In this document: piece by piece, positions 4,260 to 58,976 of the stretch
How positions within the stretch are numbered: position 1 is the first letter of the stretch
Layout: each line of letters begins with the position of its first letter
Assembly (NCBI GenBank): GCA_037447605.1
Contig: CM074816.1
Span: forward strand, 1,950,525-2,014,524
DNA: 64,000 bases
Direction of reading: 5' to 3'
Source of the DNA: Zygnema circumcarinatum SAG 698-1b
Lineage: Eukaryota > Plantae > Zygnematophyceae
Position numbers and translations under genes: made by a program
Notes under the pieces: model-generated
The model's input: the letters and a program-made list of their open reading frames with translations, nothing else
Told to the model about the DNA's origin: nothing
Databases searched by the model: none

Positions 4260-7200
4260 TCATTTCAACGCTTCCAAAACGAGCTGTCGAGAATCTCCAC
4301 ACTCAGAGGGGCGGTGCCAGATAAACGTGTAGCTCAGAGGGCGGTCCATCCGGAACTCCCCAACGGACGAATTGCGGACGGGCTCGTAGCCGGGGAACGC
4401 TTCGCTCGCAAAGGGAGCCACCTCTTGAAGAAAGAAGAAAGCATTTCTCGCCATCCTCTCCACCTGCAGCCCCTCGACGTCCTTCAGCACGTTATTTTAC
4501 TACTATGGGGGTTCAGACTGAAAAAAAGCTGAATATGGATATGGAACTTGTTTTGAAGAAAGTATATTTTGAATTCTCTATTTTACTACGTATATTGCGA
4601 GAAAGAGTGTGCTGATTTCGGATTCCGACAGTGCGAACGTTTTTTCTAAAGTTTCAAACCCCGTATATTACGACGAATAAAGTGAGGTCATAAACTTAGG
4701 GCCGGCGAGGAGGCAAGGGATAGATAGACAATATCGGAACCCTCTTGTTATCCGTCACATTTTCGAGGCAAGGTTCGATTTGAGGAGGGAAAACGGTTCA
4801 AAGCTTCGCCAAAGGAGGTAGGCGTCTACAGACACATAGAACAGTAGAAAAAGAAGTACTGGCTGTATGAGGAAAAAAAATTATGTTTGAAGGAGAAGGT
4901 GTGCTGGAAGAGCTGCACTCACCTTCCACCTAGAGAACTGGTCATTGCATAACGTAAGCACAACTTTCGCCTCCGTGAGTCCCATAAGGAACGGAAGACT
5001 GAGGGACCCAAAGAAGTTCGCAAATAGTCCTTGATGGCCTTCAGAATCTTCGTCGCTGCCCAGGAAGGGAAAATTCCACACCACTTTTCCGACCTTTTTC
5101 CACGGAAGAACAGGAGCCTCCCGAGCTCTGAATACCTTGCCATCTCCTTTTCTCCTCTCACCTTTCCCTCTAACACTACCTTCTGCTCTCACTGCCCGGT
5201 CTAAATAGGCGCCCACCTTTGTGGAGTCGATTCCAAAAAAGACGTGTGCTTTACATGTGCTTCTCAAAACGTTCAGTCGCAAACTCACAACAGGAAACTT
5301 TGCTACGGCAGTCGCTTCCGTATCGTACGAGGTAGCAAGAATCCGGTTCGGTTGGTCAATGACTTTAGCGAGGGCCATAGAAAACGAGAAATCTCCTTCT
5401 CCAAGCAGCAAAATTTGGTGATCGGAGTCTGCGGTGCGGTAAAGCTCACGCAGTCGTTCCATGCCTTGTTCCGTTGCTGTCGTTGAAAGGAACTCCAACG
5501 GTCCATCATCGACAGGTAAATTGGTCCGCATTGCATCCTGCCGAGTGTGCAGGAAGACGCACCTATCACCGTTTCGGCAGCCCTGCAAAAGAGGCCCGTT
5601 CAGCATATATATTCAATTTTATTTTTTATTTAATTCCTCCCCGCTTCAAGGAAGGTCAAGGTCTCCTCAACGATTCACGACCTTTTGCCCGCTTAGCTCT
5701 CCACATAAACATAACTTACATTTTGCATAGAACCCACAAAACTGCAATACATAGCATGAGAATCTTCTAATGAAAGATCGAACCCGTACCTGAGGTGATG
5801 TGAAAAATCTGCAAGTAGGAGTCTTCGTATTTGCACTTCTAGCAGGTTCTGAAGGGCCTGTATGCACGAAATGGCAACTTTCCCCACGAAAACATGATCC
5901 ATTTTGATAGAATATGCAGCTTTTTCCATTTTTATGGAGTTGCTTGCTCTCTTCACCATCTTTGGTTTGAAGTTCTGGAAATTCAGAAGTAGAAAGCTCC
6001 TGCAAAGTGGCCCAGTCTGCAGATGTTGTTCGGCTCCGAGATTCGTCCGAAGTCGTGGATTGGACTGAGAAATTGTGAGTGCCAAAACTTCCGATTCGGC
6101 TGCTTGAGTCAGTTCTACAATTCCTCAAATGTCCCTCTCCATAATGACCTTGAGAAAATGCCAAGTCATTGTCAGTTGAGTTCCTGAGTGAGGACGGGTA
6201 GGGAAAGCCTTCTTCTTGAACTCCATGGCCGTTTCTGTACTCGTGACTGAATCCGTTTTTAGCAACTGTTTCCTGTGGGGAATCCCTGTTCCATGTATCC
6301 TCAGGCGACCTTCCATTACTCGATTCATTCCCGTACTGACTTCCGCCAAACCTCTCTTCCTCCGCTTCACTCGCTTGAGCTTGAGATCTATCTGCACTCC
6401 TCTGTCCATTTTCCAGTGAAGAAAGAAAAGCACGGAACAGATAAGAAAACGGAGTCTCGTGTTCAAGAGATTCAATACGAGGTAAAACATCAAGAAACGA
6501 AAGGGATTCAAACTCTTGCCTACCTCCTGTAGAAGAGACTTCAACTTGGTAAGTGTCCCATCCGAGTGAATAGCCCGCGGATGGACAAAGGGAGTTGAGT
6601 TACACTCCTCCGCAGTTCCGCCATGAGGAGACATAATCGCACTCTCTTCTGACAAGACTAAGCCTTCAGGTCCGAGAGGCACAGGAGTTGATGCGGAAGA
6701 AACTTCGCATTCGTGAAAAGAACCGTTTGCCGTAAAGTACGACGGAGGTCCAAGGTTGTCCTCGAGAAATGCGGGCAGGAAAGTGTGCAAATTCTCTAAG
6801 GTGACATTCACTGACGAACACACGCAATAGCCAGGCAAGAACATGGTGTCAAGCAAGAGAAATTGAAAGGGATCTATCTGCATCGAGGTTATCTATATGT
6901 AATACTGAGGGAGATTGACCTCGCTATGCTCATGGAATAACAACCACCTTTACATCTTTATGACACCCCTCCTTCTCCATCAACCCATCTTCTCGCCATT
7001 CCCATCCCTTTCCCTCTGCTTGCTTCCTTTCTCCTTCTCATCACTATACCTCTAGACTCTCTTGTCTATCCTCTCATCCCCTCTTCCCTCCCTTCCCTCT
7101 CCACCTCAACGCCCACCTTCCAACCCCTCTCCCTCTTACCCGTCTCCCTCTCTCACCTGTCTCCCTCCCCCCCCATCTCCCTCTCACCTGTCTCCCGCCA

Positions 7201-10200
7201 CCCCTACTCCCTCTCACCTGCCTCCTTCCCTTACCCTCCCTCTCACCTGTCTCCCTCCAGCCCCTCTCCCTCTCACCTGTCTCCCTCTCACCTGTCTCCC
7301 TCCCCCCCCATCTCCCTCTCACCTGTCTCCCGCCACCCCTACTCCCTCTCACCTGCCTCCTTCCCTTACCCTCCCTCTCACCTGTCTCCCTCCAGCCCCT
7401 CTCCCTCTCACCTGTCTCCCCTCTCCCTCTCAGCTGTCTCCCCTCTCCCTCTCACCTGTCCCCCTGTCCCCCACCTCCCACACACCTGTCGCCCCCCCAA
7501 ACTCCCACTCACCTGTCTCCCCCCCCTCTCCCTCTCGCCTGTCAACGCCCTCCCTCTCCCTCTCACCTGTCTCCCTCGCCTCCCTCTCCCTCTCACCTGT
7601 CTCCCTCGCCTCCCTCTCCCTCTCACCTGTCTCGTCAATGGCATGCAGCGCTGACTGCAGCAGATGGTGCCGTCTGCACCACTCACTCTCCATCTCCGCT
7701 GATGGCCCTTCCACTGTTCCTCCTGCGGGGCAGAAATCGGCTTCCAGGGGGCCCTCTACCTTCACCCTCTCCGCATAATGCACAATAGCATGGAGCCTCT
7801 CCACATCCTGCAGCTTTCAAAGGTACATTGCTCATCAAAAACTGAATTTGGAGACGCAAAGCATGTATCTCCAAACAATCATACATCAGATCAAGCTGCC
7901 ACAAGGATCTGATAGGGCTCTCCATAGCCCCCATCACACCAAACTCTCGCCCCTCCGCTTCTACAAACAAAGGGCCCATTCTGAGTCCACTGCAAGTAAA
8001 AGAAAAAGCTGACGTTCAGCAGAAGCATAGGATTATGTATGCGTAATGGCCAGCATATATGGAAGGAAACGACTTTTGATTGAACAAAGACAATCAACAA
8101 TCTTCACTGCGCTTCGATAATGCGCAACCAGAAACCAAGAAAACAACAAAAACAAACTTAAGAAAATGCCACGGCTTGCATAACATTCGACAATTCTTAA
8201 AAGAGAATCACCTGAAACCAGGTACGAACCTTGAAAGTTCTCTGCCAAAACTCAAAGGCGAAGAGGTTTGCCAGATAGGCCTTGTCCATTGATGGGTGCG
8301 CCGAATACGACTCGGAAGTATCCTCGTCCGGTGGAGAATAGCTCTCTAAAAACTTTTGGTGCTGCCCACCAATACCCCATCCTCACCAAAAATCCGTCAA
8401 GTTGGGGGGCCAACAACTCACAACCTGCCAAGCTTCTTGAAACAAACCTAAAAAGTGGAACCTCAAACAGGAAAGGAGTAAGGGTACTGACCAGAGAAAC
8501 GGCGCCAAATGGTCGATTAATGGGTAAAGGGGCCGCATCCATGAGAGCAAAAAGGATCAAGCCCTCTCTCAATATGCCCAGCTTTCCACCGCGGATGACC
8601 ATAATAGCTGCTTCCAGTGAGAGAGGGAGAGTGACCAGCAGCCGCCCATATGTAGTTGGGGTATAAATTTGTCGATGATTTTTCTCGGATAACGTAATTG
8701 CATTTATTTGCACGAGGTACGACAGTGCCTTAGCCACAGTGGCTGCTTCAGGCGGGTCCATTACTCTAGAGAATAACACTGCAGAGATAGGATGGACAGG
8801 ACACGAGAGGAGAGGAGAGAGAGACGAGAGGGAGGAAAGGAAGAGCGGAAGAGACAGCAGATCGCGATAGTCAGCAAAAGAAAAGGAGAGGAAGAGATCA
8901 AGGAAACCACGATAGGTTTGAAGTTAAATGCTCCATTCCTCATCCTCCAAACAATCGCCTGGTTTCACTTTATTTCGGTAGATAAGCCCTCGTGAGTAAG
9001 CAATTTTTCCGCTTCAAAAAGAAAGATTAATTTTACTCACAAGATATTTTTCGTTAATGATAATTTCTCCCTGTTGCGGTTGATAAAGGGCGGTAACGAG
9101 GTTAATAATAGTGCTTTTACCAAAACCATTTTCTCCTTGTAAATCATTAATTTGGCCACGGACAAAACTCAAATCAATCACTGAACAGGATGTATAAGTT
9201 GTCCGTGAAAACATATGCATACCTTGGGGATCATTAAGGGCCTTATGCGATGCACATGAAAGCATCAAAACTTGCTTCCGTAGTGATAGCAGCTGCACTG
9301 CTGGGGTTTCATATTTGGCAAATTCCGTGTACGATTTCCGTGGAACTAAACGGTACACCACTCCATCGCAAGTACGACCGGTACGGCCCTTCCTCTGGTC
9401 TGCCTGGAGATCTCAGAAAATGGTCAACAATGGAAGGTAAAGACCAATACGAATGCAGCTAAGAGGGACAACTGCTTTCACTCTCCCTCCCCTTTCCTCT
9501 CCTCCCCTACCTTCAACGCACTCTCCTTTTTTCTCCTTTCATGGTCCTGCCCCGTCTTCCCTCGCTCCACACGCTCTACCTTCGTCCCCTCCCTCCTTCT
9601 CCCTCCTTTCCTCCCCCCCTCTTTTCTTTTTATCTTCCCTCCTCCCTCTCTCCCCTTCCTCACTTCAGCCTCAGCCTTTCCTTCTTGTTTCCATCCCCAG
9701 TCAAATCCCACCTCTCTCCTCTCCAATCCCGTCCTCCTTCCCACATTCTCCCCTCCATCCTCTCCTCCATCCTCCCCTTCATCAACATCTCCCTTCTTTA
9801 TGGCCCACCTGTGACTGTGACACCCAAACAATTCGAGGCATGTGGCGGTTCTCTGTCGTCAGCCAACAGAGTTCAAGATTACGGCAGAGGTCCACTACGA
9901 AGCTGACACCTGGCATTGTCACAGATGACTCGGCAATATTTGTCGCCAATACGACCTGCACTCTCCCCCTCCGCCGAAAAATGAAAGGAGCTTCCAACTC
10001 ATCTAAATTACCAACACAGGCAACTTTCTCTCCACTAACATTCTAACAAATCGACATCAAAGAGTTAGAATGCAGAACAATTTTACTCTAGTTTCCGTTC
10101 TTCCTGCTTCAATCAGGTTCACTATAACCCTCCATTCTGCTGAAGAAATGGAGCCCTAAGCCCCTAGAAACCCGAAAAGCCTAACATCCTAATATTCACA

Positions 10201-42895: not shown

Positions 42896-44183
42896 GCGTG
42901 ATGCTGGGGGGAGCGTTCGCCGCCTGACAGGCAGGCTGTTGAGAATGGGCCGTTGCATCCACCTATACCACAGCAGCTGTAGTTGATGCTCATTCCAAGT
43001 TTTGCACCGCGGAATTGGGGCTGTCTGAGACACCACCGATGTGTGTTGATGTACACTACTGCAGAGGTCGTGTAGCAGAGAGCAGGTTTTTAGCGCGGTT
43101 GACCCGAACAGAAGTCTTGTTTTCGTGTAGAAGTGTACATTCTGCCAGTGACTCCCGTCTTTCGATGAGTAGGTTAGTGACAGGCTAGCATTGTATAGAG
43201 ACTAAGTAGAAGATTTTAGCCAGGTAGGCTTCATGGCGTGCATAATTTTGACTCTAAGCGAATTATGCAATAACAACTTTGTCAACATTGATTTCTGAGA
43301 TTCTTCTCTTCTCATTCCCGAATCTCTGCTCCATAAAATGAGCTGTATGGGTTTTTAGGGTTTTTCCCCTTCTCTGATCAGTGTCACTTCCTGCAACGCT
43401 TTTTAAGCCCTCGCTATGGAGCTCTTTTCTAAGCCGAAAATCGGATGAACGTTGCAGTTAGAACTGACCTGGGGCACCTTTTCATGCAAGCGAGCAGCAG
43501 GCTTAGGGGTTGCTTCGACTCTGCAGTACATGCAATCTCCCACCATGCCTGAATGTCCCCTTTCCACTCTCCCCCCTCTCTCTTCCCCCCCACTTACCTC
43601 CTCCCCTCTCGCCCTTTCCCTTCCTCTTGTTCCTCTTGTTCCTCTCGTTCCCCTTGTTCCCCCTCTCCCGTCTCCCCCCGTCTCTCGCTCTCATCTCCTC
43701 TGACCCTCCTCCATTCCCCCTCCGTTCCCGCTCTCTTGCAGTCTCTCACGTTGCCCTCCCTTCGTCCCCCCCTCCCTCTTCTCCCTCTCCCTCTCCCTCT
43801 CCCTCTTTGACTCCCACTCCCTCTCCCATCCGAAGGGCGCCTTCAGTTCCGTTCCATGAGCGCGGTCAGGACCGACCGTTCCGTCCACCCCTCCTCCGGA
43901 GGAGTCTTCCGGCCATTCGCGTGCCGTCACGCGCCGACCAATGATCCGCCAGCGTGCGACTGCCATGCTGGCGCTCATCCAATTTTACAACTTTGAAATA
44001 TGTACGGACAAAGCTTGGCTTGCAATGATGTCCACGTGGCGAGCGCTGATTGGAGCTGCCATTTTCTTTTTGCAAAACGACGCGTCCTGCGTGGACCGGT
44101 GCGGACCGGTACGGACCGCACTCATGGACCGCGGCCCTCTATAGAAACCGTGACTCGCGTTTTTCGCACGGTTGACTCCAACA

Positions 44184-44707
44184 TTCCGAACCTGAGGTTC
44201 GGAAAAGCAATCATTAGGGGTTGAAAGACCCATTAACTTGAGCAATTGAACAATTAAATATTTTGGTGGTGGTACCAAAATTATTTTGGTAAAATATTAA
44301 TATATTTTAATATTTTATATTTTTGTTCAAAAAAAACCTATTCGTTTTCGGCGTTTAAAAAAACTGCTTTCGCTTTAGGTTTCTTCTTTTCTTTGGAACG
44401 ACGATCCTTGTTCAGATTCAAATTCAAAACAAAACCAATTAAACATTGAACAATTAAAATTTCGATTGCGATTTGTTATAATCTTGTTGTTGATCGGTGG
44501 ATGCAAAGTAAATCGAAATTGAACGCGACTGCGAGTTAAATGTTCAATGTTCAATTGGATTCGCATTGGATTTCGCATTGATCAAGGACTGATTTCTCAA
44601 AAAAAACCCAGTAACATAAAGCGGAAACTGCTTTTCTTTGGACTGCGGTTTTGAAAGTTTTTTTTTTGAAAAGCCAAAATCTTTAATTTTTGTATGTGTT
44701 CAACCTA
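44184..44707. mobile_element. Possible non-autonomous DNA element (AT-rich ~0.5 kb, imperfect terminal inverted repeats, adjacent perfect hairpin)
   Basis: There is an abrupt AT-rich island bounded by TAGGGGTTGAA (44215) and TTCAACCTA (44707). Internal ATTGAACAATTAAA occurs twice, plus inverted TGTTCAAT. A hairpin TTCCGAACC-tga-GGTTCGGAA lies at 44184-44204. No target-site duplication was found. Confidence 0.35.
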
Positions 44708-45128
44708 CCTGGTGGCAGGGTACTCGTTTTGGTCTCCAGCTGACGGAAGTTGACCTCCGGTCGGGTCACGGAGTCCGCGGGCGCGCGCGCGGCCGCGACC
44801 CGCGCGGGTCATGACGCCCCCCCCCCCGGGGACCCAATCGCGGCGCGCGCCCGCCCACACTTGCGCACACGCGCGCGTCGCCGCTATTGGGCCGCCGGGA
44901 TGCCACGTGGCGCAGCGCACCTACGTGGCCGCCGCGACAAGTAGCGCACCGACGCTCCGCGACAAGGGGCGAGCAGGCCACTCTGTAGGCGCGCGGCGGG
45001 AGAGGCGAGAGGGAGAGAGGGAGAGAGAGTGGGAGAGAGAGGGGGAGGGAGAGGGAGAAAGGGAGAGAGAGAGAGAGAGCGAGAGAGAGAGGAGTCTGAC
45101 AGCAGAGTGCGGGAGGTAAGAGAGAGCA

Positions 45129-55500: not shown

Positions 55501-58500
55501 GCAATGCAACCGCACGGTAAGTCACGAGGCCATAGTTCTCCATGGCTCCGGCCGCAAAGTCAGGAATGGCTATCATGTCCAGCTTGGGAAGCGAGTATGC
55601 TGTTCCAAAGTACCTGGAGGAGGAACGACAAGAAAGCCTCTCCGGAAAAGAGTGAGAGGGAGAATGAAGCAACGGACGGGCAAACATCCATTAGCTTCAT
55701 CAACCACATTACCACAATCAACAGAGAAAAGTGAATTCACAAGTGAATTGTTTAGCGAGTTGAAAGAGGGCGACTGCTTACGAGGCGAAAAAAGGCAGTG
55801 TCTTAACCGCCACATCAAGAGCGAATTGACCAAGATTCTGGGACCCCACTTCTGTGTACACACGTACTGGCAAACCTGCAGTCACTTTCACCCAAACTAG
55901 GGTCAGAAAACTTAAAAAAAATCCTCTGTCAAATGTTAGAACATTGACCAGGCTGAAACGAAAAAAACCATTTCTTAACATTAGGTTGATACTTTAATTG
56001 ATTAGTTCTACACCGCACGACGATCAGCGCAAAGACTAGGTTGAACCATTTGACCTTGCTCCTACGACCTAAGGATGTCGTCAGCCTCAGCAGGTCCCAT
56101 TCGACGCTTTCAGGTGGCTCATGGACTGCCGCCCAGAAGTTTACCATCCTCGGTCTTCCCTTCAATGTAATCGAACTCCCCCACCACCACCGCCACAAGG
56201 TAAGTGGACATGCGAGGGGACTCTTTGAACTTGACGATGTTTGTGTCTCCCGCGGCAGTCTCCGTGTCTACCGGCATGTTGGACAGCACCACGCGGCCCT
56301 TGGGAGCCGCCACCGTGATCACATACGTGGCCTGCGCGGGCCACCCAGAAGTCACTCCTGGGAGCAATGGCTGTCCACTGCATCCTTCGCAGGGCTGGAG
56401 GGTTGGGCATAGAGAGGCTAATGCAAACACAAGTTAGGCAGCTTGATTGCTCTTTACAACGCTGTCCCAATTTAATATTGAAATTGTTGCGACACTAAAT
56501 TATTTCTAACATGACCTTTCGCTTTCTGCATCTGGAGACATTACTTTGTTCAACAAGATACGAGCCATTACAACCTCACGTCAACTTTCCTGAATGCCTT
56601 TTGCTTTCATTACTATCACCTGAATCGTTTGCTGCCTTCCAACCTTTAAGGAGCGTTGGAAGGCACTGTTGTCATTGGTCCTACTGAAAATTAATTCGCA
56701 CATTGTGAGTGCAATTGATTGCCACCGTTTATGTAGGCAAATACAGGAATTCATTGTACCTGGTTCATCGCCACAGCTTTTCCTTCAGCGTTTCGCAAGC
56801 TTTCCATGCATTTATGTTTTTTTATCCCTAATCGTTTATGAAAATCTTCCACGTCCCCATAGAAGGCGAATTATCACACATGGCCATGAGGCGGAGTTTT
56901 AGGTGGCAAGCACGTCAGTTGATACATGAGCATTAGAACGATTGTCCGACAGAAAGCATGCGCTTAGTTGACCAACATAATGCTTTTACTAAAACTCAAG
57001 AGTGCTGTTTCAACTCTTGGTTCAATGGTGTGGGACATTAATCAAGCTGTGACCTTGTGGATGCAGATGGTCAACTGATTCAGGGCGTTGTGATTTTTGA
57101 AGTTCCACTCAAAAGGTGAAAGAGAATAAGGCGGCTTGAACAACATTACTATGGTCCTAAGCGTATTCAAAAGGCATTAATATGGGAAATTACAAATCGT
57201 AGGAATATTAGGTCAAACTATGTATTGATTTACATTGACGAAAGCAAGCGACTCCACGCTCAAATGAACCACCAATCCATTAAGTAATCACTGGCGACAA
57301 ACGGTGAAACCAGCGACCGAAGCAACCTTCCGCATAACAAAGTCACAGGCGACCAACGCGACTTGCCAGCCTGACAGCCCTGCAATCACACATTTTGACT
57401 CTGTCTATAGGTCGAGATTATTTCAACCGATTCAACGGTGAAACAAACGAGGTGGCACCCTTTGGTCATCGGTCTGAAGGTTCTTTTGGTCACAAGCATT
57501 TGTACCTATTTGTAACCAGTTCCGCCATACGAATAGCGAACCTGACGTGAACTTGCTTCGCTTCTAAGTCCAAGCGAGATGCTGGACAAACCAGGTGCTA
57601 CAAATTGCATACCAAACGATGTAACAAGGCACGTAGAACTTACCTTAAAAGAAGGTTCATCCCAACAAGGAAAGCATCTCCGCGCATCTGCAGCCTCAAA
57701 TTGCGTAACTGCCATATTCCTCTGCTCGCCCTTCACTGTGTACGTGCTGTTCATAGAAGTAGCAAATACACACTCTTAATCATTGGGGTCACCTACAACA
57801 TCGTCACCTTGGCAAGTTGTGTAAAGTGCATTGTCTACTGACCAAGAATGCAATCAGGGAAGAAAAATATGTAAAGAATACAGTATTGCCAGCTAAACTC
57901 TGAGAAATGCTCTCCCTCAAAATACTGATGATAACGAAAAGCGACGATAAAGCATTCCGCCTGATGCACACAAACAAAATGCAGTGCGTCGTACCTTCTA
58001 TAGAAACCCTTCATCTGATCGTTGAGGGTGCCCTGATACTCGATATGTAGCACCGCTTTACCAAGAGGAATGCTGCTACTGAATTTCAGGATCAGCAGTT
58101 CATCCGCCGAGTCTATCTCCATGGAAGATGGAGTCAGTTCCTGTTAATCGCATTCGACCAGCACTGAGCATGGATTTCAATGCTATTCTGACACAGGTAG
58201 TATGATTTTTCGTTGCATTGGAGGCCAGCGAGTGTGATGCAGGCAATGTCCTAGTAATCCTTGAAACACAATTCTCCTTCCTTTTAGGTTGCCCTCAAGC
58301 TTAAATGTAAACTGAATTTTTTTTTTTTTTTTAGATACGAGTGATTAAAAAACAGAAAACAAAAAAAAAAAAAAAAAAAAAAAAAAANNNNNNNNNNAAA
58401 AAAAAAAAAAAAAAAAAAAAAAAAACAAATGCAGTGCATGAAGGGCAAAAAGTCTGAAAAGACAGACACTAACATGCTTTAAAAGCTGCTCCCAGTCTTC

Positions 58501-58976
58501 AAGGAAAGTGTCCGAGACAGGATTCTGCTGCAGTGCTTTCACACATGTCAAGCTACATTTTGTGAATTGCTTGGAAATGTGAGAGTCGTTGGTGTGCCTG
58601 CTTGCAAAGGTGTTCTGTGCATCATCATTATGTTGGAAGAAATATGTTGACTTGTACTCACCTTCCCCGATTCTTCGAAAGTCAACTTTATTGAATTTTG
58701 AATGATTTCAATGTCGGCAACGTTTAGTATAATGTACTTAGTTTTCGCAGAAACTTCCACGCTTATGTCCACTACTCCGCTAAACTGGCAAGTGTTCAAA
58801 TCCGGCGAAAGGTAAATTGTGTATCTGCTCGGCAGCACACTCCTGGGAAGCCTGGGCGACGCTCCTGGAGGAGCCTCGCCGCCACATTTTGCAGCCCTTC
58901 TGACATGAGAAACAAGCAGAGCAGAGCCCAACAATGCTCCTGCTGCCAATGCTGCTCCTGCCACCCTCCCAGCCAT
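49536..58976 (-). CDS. APM1: M1 family (puromycin-sensitive) aminopeptidase, APM1-like, multi-exon
   Basis: [106 protein letters not shown] and an ERAP1_C-like tail ..SVKQCIERV. Confidence 0.95.
58388..58397. other. Assembly gap (10 N) within a poly-A run
   Basis: Run of N in the sequence. Confidence 0.99.

What the first reader, a model, noticed from the sequence alone, without database searches (positions are those of the whole stretch)
8993..9179. Mollicutes-like ABC-ATPase fragment in a nuclear intron, with TGA at a Trp position
The 444-nt DExH8 intron (8779-9222) contains an AT-rich segment encoding GENGFGKSTIINLVTALYQPQQGEIIINEKYLVSKINLSF-TGA-SGKIAYS. In ABC exporters this stretch is typically ..I(D/N)LxxWRxKIAY, so the TGA falls where Trp is expected and the frame continues through it. 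That points to a genetic-code-4 donor. The wording resembles ABC proteins of Mollicutes-related endobacteria of Mucoromycota fungi as I remember them (unverified). It would be a molecular fossil of contact between this alga and a wall-less endobacterium.
Basis: partly seen in the sequence, partly recalled or inferred. Interest (0 to 1): 0.8.

Follow-up and report, generated by a model that had tools for sequence, protein, structure and literature searches.

The report
Mollicute ABC-gene scrap in algal intron
A dead piece about 190-250 letters long of a transporter gene, from the wall-less bacteria otherwise known only as endosymbionts of mycorrhizal and related fungi, sits inside an intron of a green alga's own helicase gene and still carries that bacterium's unusual genetic code, so this bacterial lineage's DNA once reached the algal nucleus.

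Summary

- **What is there.** On the minus strand, window 9178-8993 encodes 62 residues of an ABC nucleotide-binding domain with an intact Walker A motif (Pfam ABC_tran, E 2e-10).
- **Which family.** A search of 1.84 billion proteins puts it in one narrow family of about 500-aa exporters. Every named member comes from Mollicutes-related endobacteria (MRE) of Glomeromycotina fungi. My family profile scores 83 bits, against 42 for generic Pfam and 38 for the best NCBIfam model.
- **The TGA.** The TGA at 9016-9014 falls in a column that is Trp in 45 of 45 family members. In all five homologues with DNA in hand, that Trp codon is itself TGA. The donor therefore used genetic code 4.
- **Donor signature.** Third-position GC (0.24) and the identity pattern by codon position still look like the donor's.
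- **Not an assembly chimera.** A DNA contig spans the region. Three transcript-type runs from three other studies each hold a 502-nt unitig that joins both exons through the insert with no differences. They also hold the splice joint that removes exactly 8779-9222.
- **Function.** Most likely none. It is truncated, frameshifted after KIAY and spliced out, although this intron is noticeably retained.
- **What is new.** It is a new donor-recipient pair for a known process, bacterial DNA integrating into a nucleus. Earlier notes of this scan list four other bacterial scraps in introns of this genome.

The parts
8779..9222 (-). Phase-1 GT..AG intron (444 nt) of the host DEAH-box helicase gene; it contains the bacterial scrap.
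   Evidence: Splice joint 8778|9223 (skips 444 nt, ends CT..AC on the + strand) in runs X6, X7 and X8. The flanking exon ORFs continue a DEAH helicase.
8993..9178 (-). Core of the insert: 62 codons without indels of an MRE-family ABC exporter nucleotide-binding domain, from IDLSF to KIAYS.
   Evidence: Family HMM 83.2 bits, E 3e-27, profile positions 370-431. tblastn with code 4 from MRE loci gives 54-61% identity. Identity to 45 members is 46-62%.
9110..9136 (-). Intact Walker A / P-loop motif GENGFGKST.
   Evidence: Translation. All the G, N, G, G, K, S and T columns conserved at 90% or more are kept.
9014..9016 (-). TGA codon at the invariant Trp column. It means Trp in the donor's code 4 and stop in the host's nuclear code.
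   Evidence: The column is W in 45/45 members. The codon is TGA in L014, both L015 paralogues, L016 and L017.
8960..8992 (-). Probable decayed continuation of the insert. After a deletion of about 20 nt and a frameshift following KIAY, a remnant of the family's GLST(GQKQ) signature motif lies at 8988-8977. A second TGA (8967-8965) is not at a Trp column.
   Evidence: Alternative frame. DNA comparison with L014-L017: GGCTTATCTACCG against GGTTTATCAACCGG. It is too short for the HMM to score, so it is tentative.
9179..9214 (-). Possible 5' remainder of the insert: an AT-rich stretch in the same frame with weak similarity to the family's ..SFxYE..PVL.. stretch. The HMM envelope reaches about 9193. 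It holds a perfect 9-nt inverted repeat with 9157-9165.
   Evidence: HMM envelope. One paralogue's tblastn alignment runs to 9226. Inverted repeat I8.
9223..9406 (-). Upstream host exon (the QRRGRTGR...ALNDPQ part of the helicase).
   Evidence: ORF 9014-9361. Transcript contigs end at 9406 with a loose end matching the next exon.
8252..8778 (-). Start of the downstream host exon (VLFSRVMDPPEAATV...); its far end was not mapped.
   Evidence: ORF 8252-8779. Transcript contigs cover 8500-8780.

Best explanation
This is a non-functional nuclear integrant of bacterial DNA. A piece of about 190-250 nt from the nucleotide-binding domain of an ABC exporter gene was captured into a pre-existing intron of the alga's DEAH helicase gene. 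The donor was a code-4 (UGA = Trp), AT-rich Mollicute of the lineage known as Mollicutes-related endobacteria (MRE, Ca. Moeniiplasma and kin). Capture was most likely by end-joining repair of a chromosome break close to the 5' splice site (inferred). The piece lies in the sense orientation, is transcribed as part of the pre-mRNA and is removed by splicing. It cannot make an ABC protein: the transmembrane half, Walker B and most of the signature motif are missing, the Trp codon is a stop in the host's code, and the 3' part carries a deletion and frameshift. Its one visible effect is on the host gene. The intron is about twice as long as it would be without the insert, and it is retained in a sizeable share of transcripts. 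The retained form reads in frame from the exon into the scrap and ends at the TGA, so it would encode a truncated helicase or be degraded (inferred).
For: Family assignment:
- An exhaustive HMMER search of 1.84e9 proteins gives its best single-domain hits (53-62% identity) to about 500-aa Lys/Asn-rich ABC proteins.
- All of the top 50 per-domain hits belong to that family.
- Every named member is from MRE or from AMF assemblies.
- The family HMM scores 83 bits, against 41.8 for Pfam and 38 for the best NCBIfam model.
- A 62-column tree puts the fragment inside the family, apart from generic exporters (91/74 support), with no resolved sub-position.

Code 4:
- The stop column is W in 45/45 members.
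- That codon is TGA in 5/5 homologues with DNA. The L015 gene has 9 TGA and 0 TGG.
- Several database relatives are cut off exactly before this W, as happens when code-11 gene callers read TGA as stop.

Donor signature and little decay:
- GC3 is 0.24, against 0.23-0.32 in the donors.
- Nucleotide identity by codon position is about 0.6 / 0.8 / 0.45.
- 19 of 22 columns conserved at 90% or more are kept, and one of the three exceptions is the TGA itself.

Really in the algal chromosome:
- A 4,983-nt DNA contig of X1 spans 8500-9500 with no differences.
- X6, X7 and X8, from three other studies, each hold a 502-nt unitig 8751-9252 through both exon-intron junctions and the insert with no differences, and also the spliced joint.
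- The insert alone is held only by runs of the same organism.
Against: - No near-identical donor is known. The best identity is 62% over 61 residues, and the fragment sits on a long terminal branch (0.7, median 0.23), so its place within the family is unresolved.
- The code-4 argument rests on one codon in the fragment itself. The rest comes from relatives.
- The exact insert-host boundaries cannot be set on either side, so no junction signature (microhomology, filler, duplication) supports the proposed end-joining.
- The pattern-based scans of GTDB genomes and JGI metagenomes returned only generic Walker-A matches from Bacteroidales, Bacillota and others. These scans need exact 8-residue words.
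- All runs that hold the insert may be one cultured strain, so its age and spread in the species are unknown.
- Intron-retention levels come from assembler word depths, which are rough.
- I did not verify the host's identity as a streptophyte alga beyond spliced plant-like genes and a BMT5-like domain whose nearest Atlas clusters are mostly Streptophyta. Otherwise it rests on the scan's notes.
Confidence: 0.85

Rival explanations
1. The donor was an ordinary code-11 bacterium or an organelle, and the TGA is a TGG that mutated after the piece became a pseudogene.
For: TGG to TGA is a single transition. The fragment has only one Trp column, so the code cannot be read from the fragment alone. The GTDB pattern scan returned only code-11 taxa.
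Against: The closest family lies about 20-40 bits above anything else and is made of code-4 organisms. The homologous codon is TGA in 5/5 relatives. The GTDB hits cover only 28-46 residues around the universal Walker A motif.
Confidence: 0.05
2. It is an assembly or gap-filling artefact: a read-sized piece of a contaminating mycoplasma was stitched into a low-complexity intron.
For: The size (about 200-250 nt) is close to read length. The genome has several similar bacterial scraps of 180-360 nt in introns according to scan notes. Mollicutes are common laboratory contaminants.
Against: Unitigs from three other studies join both exons through the insert without a single difference and coexist with the spliced form. 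The DNA contig has the same depth as its flanks. No run of any other organism holds the insert.
Confidence: 0.02
3. The integration is real, but it does not record an endobacterium living in the alga. The DNA came from an MRE-bearing Mucoromycota fungus in close contact with the alga, or from a free-living or epibiotic relative of MRE, through the same route as the other bacterial scraps.
For: MRE are described only as obligate intracellular bacteria of Mucoromycota (PMC11423566, PMC10507103). Many family members are unnamed metagenome contigs of unknown host. By the scan's notes, other scraps in this genome seem to come from other bacterial groups, which suggests general uptake of foreign DNA.
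Against: Nothing here separates these routes. An obligate intracellular donor makes a purely environmental source less likely. No MRE-like organism has been reported with streptophyte algae in the papers searched.
Confidence: 0.5
4. The scrap has been put to use, for example as a regulated retained-intron or poison-sequence switch for the helicase.
For: This intron is retained at about 20-40% of exon depth in three runs, while the neighbouring intron shows no coverage. The retained form stays in frame until the TGA.
Against: No alternative joint uses the scrap. The in-frame reading has a 1-in-3 chance of arising by accident. An AT-rich insert 8-30 nt from the 5' splice site could simply impair splicing. 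No conservation data exist.
Confidence: 0.05

Closest known systems
About 500-aa ABC exporter family (transmembrane domain plus shortened ATPase domain) of Mollicutes-related endobacteria (Ca. Moeniiplasma glomeromycotorum, DhMRE, GvMRE and others)
   Same: The fragment is 46-62% identical over 62 residues. It shares the family-specific wording around Walker A, the ..LYQP..GEI.IN.KY..S.INL..W..KIAY block, TGA for the invariant Trp, and low GC3.
   Different: Only about one eighth of the gene is present. There is no transmembrane part and no Walker B. The invariant Gly before LYQP is Ala, and the invariant Arg after the Trp is Ser. There is a deletion and frameshift after KIAY. It lies in a eukaryotic intron, not in a bacterial genome.
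Nuclear integrants of endosymbiont DNA (for example Wolbachia-derived segments in insect and nematode chromosomes) and organelle-derived NUMT/NUPT scraps (my own knowledge)
   Same: A non-functional piece of DNA from an intracellular-type bacterium is inserted into nuclear DNA, co-transcribed with a host gene, and keeps the donor's composition.
   Different: The donor lineage is known only from fungi and the recipient is a green alga. The piece is very short, and no living symbiont is known in the recipient.
Gene exchange between MRE and their fungal hosts (Longley et al. 2023, PMC10507103; Li et al. 2018, PMC5982333)
   Same: It involves the same bacterial lineage and exchange of DNA with a eukaryote.
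   Different: Longley et al. report host genes moving into MRE (their abstract). Here a non-functional scrap lies in a nucleus outside the fungi. I did not read Li et al. beyond the title and the first lines of the abstract.
Generic ABC_tran domain (PF00005), ABCB/MsbA-type exporters
   Same: Walker A and the beta-strands around it match (E 2e-10; ABCB1 structures at E about 4e-10).
   Different: The score is half that of the MRE-family profile. The host's own ABCB-type genes would be GC-richer and would use TGG.

Membership tests
ABC transporter ATPase domain (Pfam PF00005) | Profile match above the gathering score | tested here: met
   41.8 bits against a cut-off of 25, E 2.1e-10, profile positions 4-49 of 137.
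ABC transporter ATPase domain (Pfam PF00005) | Walker A GxxGxGK[ST] | tested here: met
   GENGFGKST at 9136-9110.
ABC transporter ATPase domain (Pfam PF00005) | Signature (LSGGQ-type) motif, Walker B and H-loop present, that is, a complete domain | tested here: not met
   Only a possible out-of-frame GLST remnant at 8988-8977. No Walker B anywhere in the intron. It is a fragment, not a domain.
MRE-type ~500-aa ABC exporter family | Scores far better with the family profile than with generic ABC profiles, and nearest neighbours are all family members | tested here: met
   83.2 bits against 41.8 (Pfam) and 38.4 (NCBIfam). The top 50 per-domain hits are all family members.
MRE-type ~500-aa ABC exporter family | Invariant Trp-Arg after ..INLxx, with the Trp encoded by TGA | tested here: met
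   W in 45/45 members, TGA in 5/5 homologues with DNA, and TGA in the window. The following Arg is Ser in the window.
MRE-type ~500-aa ABC exporter family | N-terminal transmembrane region of about 350 aa | tested here: not met
   No match to profile positions 1-369 in any frame of 8700-9300. Only a fragment was integrated.
MRE-type ~500-aa ABC exporter family | Family restricted to the MRE lineage | tested here: inconclusive
   All roughly 20 named hits are MRE, Mycoplasmataceae MAGs or gene models in AMF assemblies. No cultivated Mycoplasma, Spiroplasma or Acholeplasma appeared. About two thirds of the members are unnamed metagenome contigs.
Genetic code 4 donor | In-frame TGA at conserved Trp positions | tested here: met
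   One such position exists in the fragment and it is TGA. Relatives' genes carry 6-9 in-frame TGA. With only one site in the fragment, this depends on the relatives.
Nuclear integrant of bacterial DNA (lateral DNA transfer) | Physical continuity with host sequence in independent data | tested here: met
   DNA contig of X1, and 502-nt unitigs of X6, X7 and X8 across both junctions, from four studies in all.
Nuclear integrant of bacterial DNA (lateral DNA transfer) | Empty site in relatives, or insertion polymorphism, to date the event | not testable with these tools
   Only runs labelled as the same organism hold the region. No genomes of related algae are available here.

The most novel reading that the evidence does not exclude
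The algal lineage itself once hosted, or still hosts, a wall-less MRE-like endobacterium. That would extend this clade's host range from Mucoromycota fungi to the algal relatives of land plants. The several bacterial scraps in this genome's introns would then be a record of intracellular bacteria. A variant of the same reading is that the scrap marks an intimate alga-Mucoromycota association of the kind proposed for early land plants.
Probability: 0.3. Interest if true: 0.85.

Novelty: new member of a known kind. Interest (0 to 1): 0.62.

Why it matters
MRE are described as obligate intracellular bacteria of Mucoromycota only, and how they spread between hosts is debated (the "late invasion" view, PMC10507103 and PMC11423566).

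A fragment that keeps the donor's code, sits in the nuclear DNA of a green alga close to land plants, and is verified by independent reads shows that DNA of this lineage reached an algal nucleus. That makes three questions directly testable:
- whether such algae carry or carried Mollicute endobacteria;
- whether they had intimate contact with MRE-bearing fungi;
- how often foreign bacterial DNA is captured into their introns.

It also gives a clean marker for this kind of work: TGA at an invariant Trp separates real code-4 donors from decay. It is a small natural case of foreign DNA next to a splice site going with intron retention.

On its own it is one short dead fragment, so the biological claim stays modest.

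Tried and rejected
- **GTDB species genomes and JGI metagenomes, scanned with the 66-aa piece.** Only generic Walker-A matches came back (Bacteroidales, Paucisalibacillus, Hyphomicrobiales and others, 34-68% over 28-49 residues). These scans need exact 8-residue words, so they say nothing against the MRE assignment.
- **The search for homologous proteins with the 66-aa piece and with the host BMT5-like ORF.** Both were blank because of the word and length limits.
- **Rfam on the whole window.** Nothing.
- **Other AT-rich islands of the window.** No bacterial-looking reading frames.
- **tblastn (code 4) of 77 ORFs from four MRE loci against the window.** Only the ABC scrap matched.
- **Telomere-type repeats next to the insert, as noted for other scraps.** None within the intron.
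- **Target-site duplication or terminal repeats.** None convincing. The 13/16 match between the exon end and 9135-9150, and the 9-nt inverted repeat, are within chance expectation.
- **DNA-level alignment to relatives to fix the boundaries.** Too diverged (about 60-64% nt identity) to give more than the tentative GLST remnant.
- **Sub-placement within the family by tree.** Unresolved with 62 columns.
- **Organelle origin.** Rejected, because the family is specific to Mollicutes contigs.
- **The host's own ABCB gene as source.** Rejected on score, composition and the TGA.
Full report
**1. What is in the sequence**

The fragment lies on the minus strand. Reading window 9214 down to 8940 in one frame gives a stretch that runs through a Walker A motif (GENGFGKST, 9136-9110). 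It continues to ...INLSF, then a TGA (9016-9014), then SGKIAYS ending at 8993. The other two frames are full of stops.

- Pfam recognises the 66-residue piece before the TGA as ABC_tran (E 2.1e-10, 41.8 bits, cut-off 25).
- Solved ABCB-type exporters match at E about 4e-10.
- GC is 0.33 over 8993-9178, in the lowest 0.8% of 150-nt windows of a window averaging 0.52.
- The sequence occurs once in the window.

**2. The host gene and the intron**

ORFs on the minus strand around the site carry the motifs of a DEAH-box helicase (GETGSGKT, DEVHERS, SAT, the VVLATNIAESS block). Further downstream there is a BMT5-like methyltransferase domain.

Three transcript-type runs show a splice joint from 8778 to 9223 that skips exactly 444 nt. 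Its ends are CT..AC on the plus strand, which is GT..AG on the gene's strand.

The intron is phase 1. The scrap lies in the same orientation as the gene and begins 8-44 nt after the 5' splice site. The rest of the intron (8780 to about 8940) is purine-rich low-complexity sequence of the kind seen in neighbouring introns.

**3. Is it really in the chromosome?**

- A 4,983-nt contig of DNA run X1 covers 8500-9500 without a difference.
- Runs X6, X7 and X8 come from three other studies. Each holds a 502-nt unitig 8751-9252 that runs from exon through the whole intron into the other exon with no differences.
- The same three runs also hold a 58-nt unitig with the spliced joint.
- The insert alone (8960-9214) is held only by runs carrying the same organism label.

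A chimeric assembly or a gap filled with a contaminant read is therefore excluded for practical purposes.

Word depths are rough. They suggest that the intron is retained in a sizeable share of transcripts: 10-13 for the retained form, 16-28 for the joint and 15-63 for the exons. The next intron shows no coverage in the same runs, although the tool warns that holes prove nothing.

**4. Whose gene was it?**

- An exhaustive HMMER search of 1.84 billion representative proteins gave 3,355 hits. The best single-domain matches (53-62% identity) were Lys/Asn-rich proteins of about 500 aa, or pieces of them.
- Ranked by best domain, all of the top 50 belong to one family.
- Searching with a full-length member (P0011) showed who they are. 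Every named hit of the family is one of these: Ca. Moeniiplasma glomeromycotorum, the endosymbionts DhMRE of Dentiscutata heterogama and GvMRE of Glomus versiforme, Mycoplasmataceae bacterium RV_VA103A or RC_NB112A, Mycoplasmataceae MAGs, or a eukaryote-style gene model in assemblies of Entrophospora, Funneliformis, Cetraspora, Racocetra and Ambispora.
- The one such contig I inspected (Entrophospora, L016) has bacterial-type neighbour genes, low GC and in-frame TGA codons, so these models probably sit on bacterial contigs.
- Below the family, scores drop to generic exporters.
- A profile built from 42 members matches the window frame at 83.2 bits (E 3e-27, profile 370-431, window 9178-8993). 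That is twice the Pfam score and twice the best NCBIfam score of 38 bits. No NCBIfam model reaches its cut-off even for full-length members.
- Identity to 45 full-length members is 46-62% (median 56%), against a member-to-member median of 63%.
- A tree on the 62 columns puts the fragment inside the family, apart from generic exporters (91/74 support). It sits near P0174, P0176, a Moeniiplasma protein and the GvMRE protein, but on a long branch and without a supported sub-position.

**5. The TGA**

- In the family alignment the stop falls in a column that is Trp in 45 of 45 members.
- I have the DNA of five homologues: L014, two paralogues in L015, the Entrophospora-assembly contig L016, and GvMRE L017. 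In all five that Trp is encoded by TGA.
- The L015 gene has nine in-frame TGA and no TGG. The GvMRE gene has six TGA and three TGG.
- Several database relatives (P0002, P0005, P0016, P0017) end exactly one residue before this Trp. That is the mark of code-11 gene callers stopping at a code-4 Trp codon. In L014 the reading frame continues through the TGA to the normal end of the protein.

The simplest reading is that the window's TGA is the donor's own Trp codon, not a decayed TGG.

**6. State of preservation**

- The 62-codon core has no indel and no stop other than the TGA.
- It agrees with the family at 19 of 22 columns conserved at 90% or more. The exceptions are the TGA itself, Gly to Ala before LYQP, and Arg to Ser after the Trp.
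- Nucleotide identity to relatives is about 0.6, 0.8 and 0.45 at codon positions 1, 2 and 3. GC3 is 0.24, like the donors at 0.23-0.32.

Most of the divergence therefore arose while the gene was under selection in bacteria. Little neutral decay or compositional drift towards the host has followed. My rough inference is at most a few per cent.

After KIAY the frame breaks. Only 7 nt separate the Tyr codon from a GGC-TTA-TCT-ACC (GLST) remnant at 8988-8977, where relatives have 27 nt. That implies a deletion of about 20 nt and a frameshift. This extension is tentative because the HMM does not score it.

Upstream of 9178 the similarity fades. The HMM envelope reaches about 9193. Donor-like DNA thus spans at least 186 nt and perhaps about 250 nt.

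**7. How it got there and what it does**

I found no target-site duplication, terminal repeats or adjacent telomere-type repeats, and no second copy. tblastn with 77 ORFs from four MRE loci hits nothing else in the window.

I infer capture of a stray piece of bacterial DNA during end-joining repair of a break in a pre-existing intron, as for organelle-derived and Wolbachia-derived nuclear inserts. That comparison is from my own knowledge.

The piece cannot encode a working protein. Its only visible consequence is on the host transcript. The retained-intron form stays in frame from ...ALNDPQ into the scrap and stops at the TGA (ORF 9014-9361). That would give a truncated helicase or a decay target. 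No alternative splice joint uses the scrap.

**8. What remains open**

- **Route.** MRE are described as obligate intracellular bacteria of Mucoromycota, with debated horizontal spread (PMC10507103, PMC11423566). I found no paper linking them, or Mollicutes in general, with streptophyte algae. The scrap shows that DNA of this lineage reached the algal nucleus. It does not show whether the bacterium lived in the alga, in a fungus touching the alga, or outside cells.
- **Other scraps.** Earlier notes of this scan list other bacterial scraps of 180-360 nt in introns of the same genome: IF-2, pyrophosphatase, gpmI and lpdA. I could not read those windows. All four genes belong to the small gene set typical of Mollicutes (my own knowledge), so a common donor is worth testing.
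- **Host identity.** That the host is a green alga close to land plants rests on those notes. My own checks show only a spliced eukaryotic gene and a BMT5-like domain whose nearest Atlas clusters are mostly Streptophyta.

**9. Verdict**

It is a new donor-recipient pair for a known process, non-functional in itself, and of real but moderate interest as a lead on Mollicute-alga or fungus-alga contact.

Noticed in passing
window 8751-9252 compared with 9407-9500: The intron carrying the scrap is retained in three transcript-type runs (unitig depth 10-13, splice joint 16-28). The neighbouring intron shows zero depth in the same runs. The insert near the 5' splice site may impair splicing.
   Followed up: partly
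window 9157-9165 and 9199-9207: A perfect 9-nt inverted repeat (CACGGACAA / TTGTCCGTG), 33 nt apart, lies at the 5' edge of the insert. It could be a trace of snap-back synthesis at integration, or chance (expected about 0.1 per region of this size).
   Followed up: no
window 9222-9237 and 9135-9150: The exon end plus splice donor (..LNDPQ|G) and the insert's ..INDLQG share 13 of 16 nt. This is probably coincidence.
   Followed up: no
window 44158-44716: The strongest AT-rich island of the window (GC down to 0.23, about 560 nt) has no bacterial-looking reading frame. It may be a small mobile element or an intron repeat.
   Followed up: partly
window 58216-58542 and about 13300: Long A/T homopolymer tracts and short runs of N mark assembly gaps in low-complexity sequence.
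   Followed up: no
L015:1891-6152: An MRE-like metagenome contig carries three tandem paralogues of this ABC family (392, 492 and 502 aa). All are readable only with code 4.
   Followed up: partly
L016 (Entrophospora sp. SA101 assembly, CAKLDN070000038.1): A 60-kb contig at 33% GC with bacterial-type genes (tRNA synthetases, L36, thymidylate kinase) is annotated with eukaryote-style multi-exon gene models. The models fuse unrelated bacterial genes and skip TGA codons. It is an MRE contig left in a fungal assembly, in line with PMC11423566.
   Followed up: partly
window 4881-5606 (minus): The downstream ORF on the same strand has a BMT5-like rRNA methyltransferase domain (Pfam, E 1.5e-21).
   Followed up: partly
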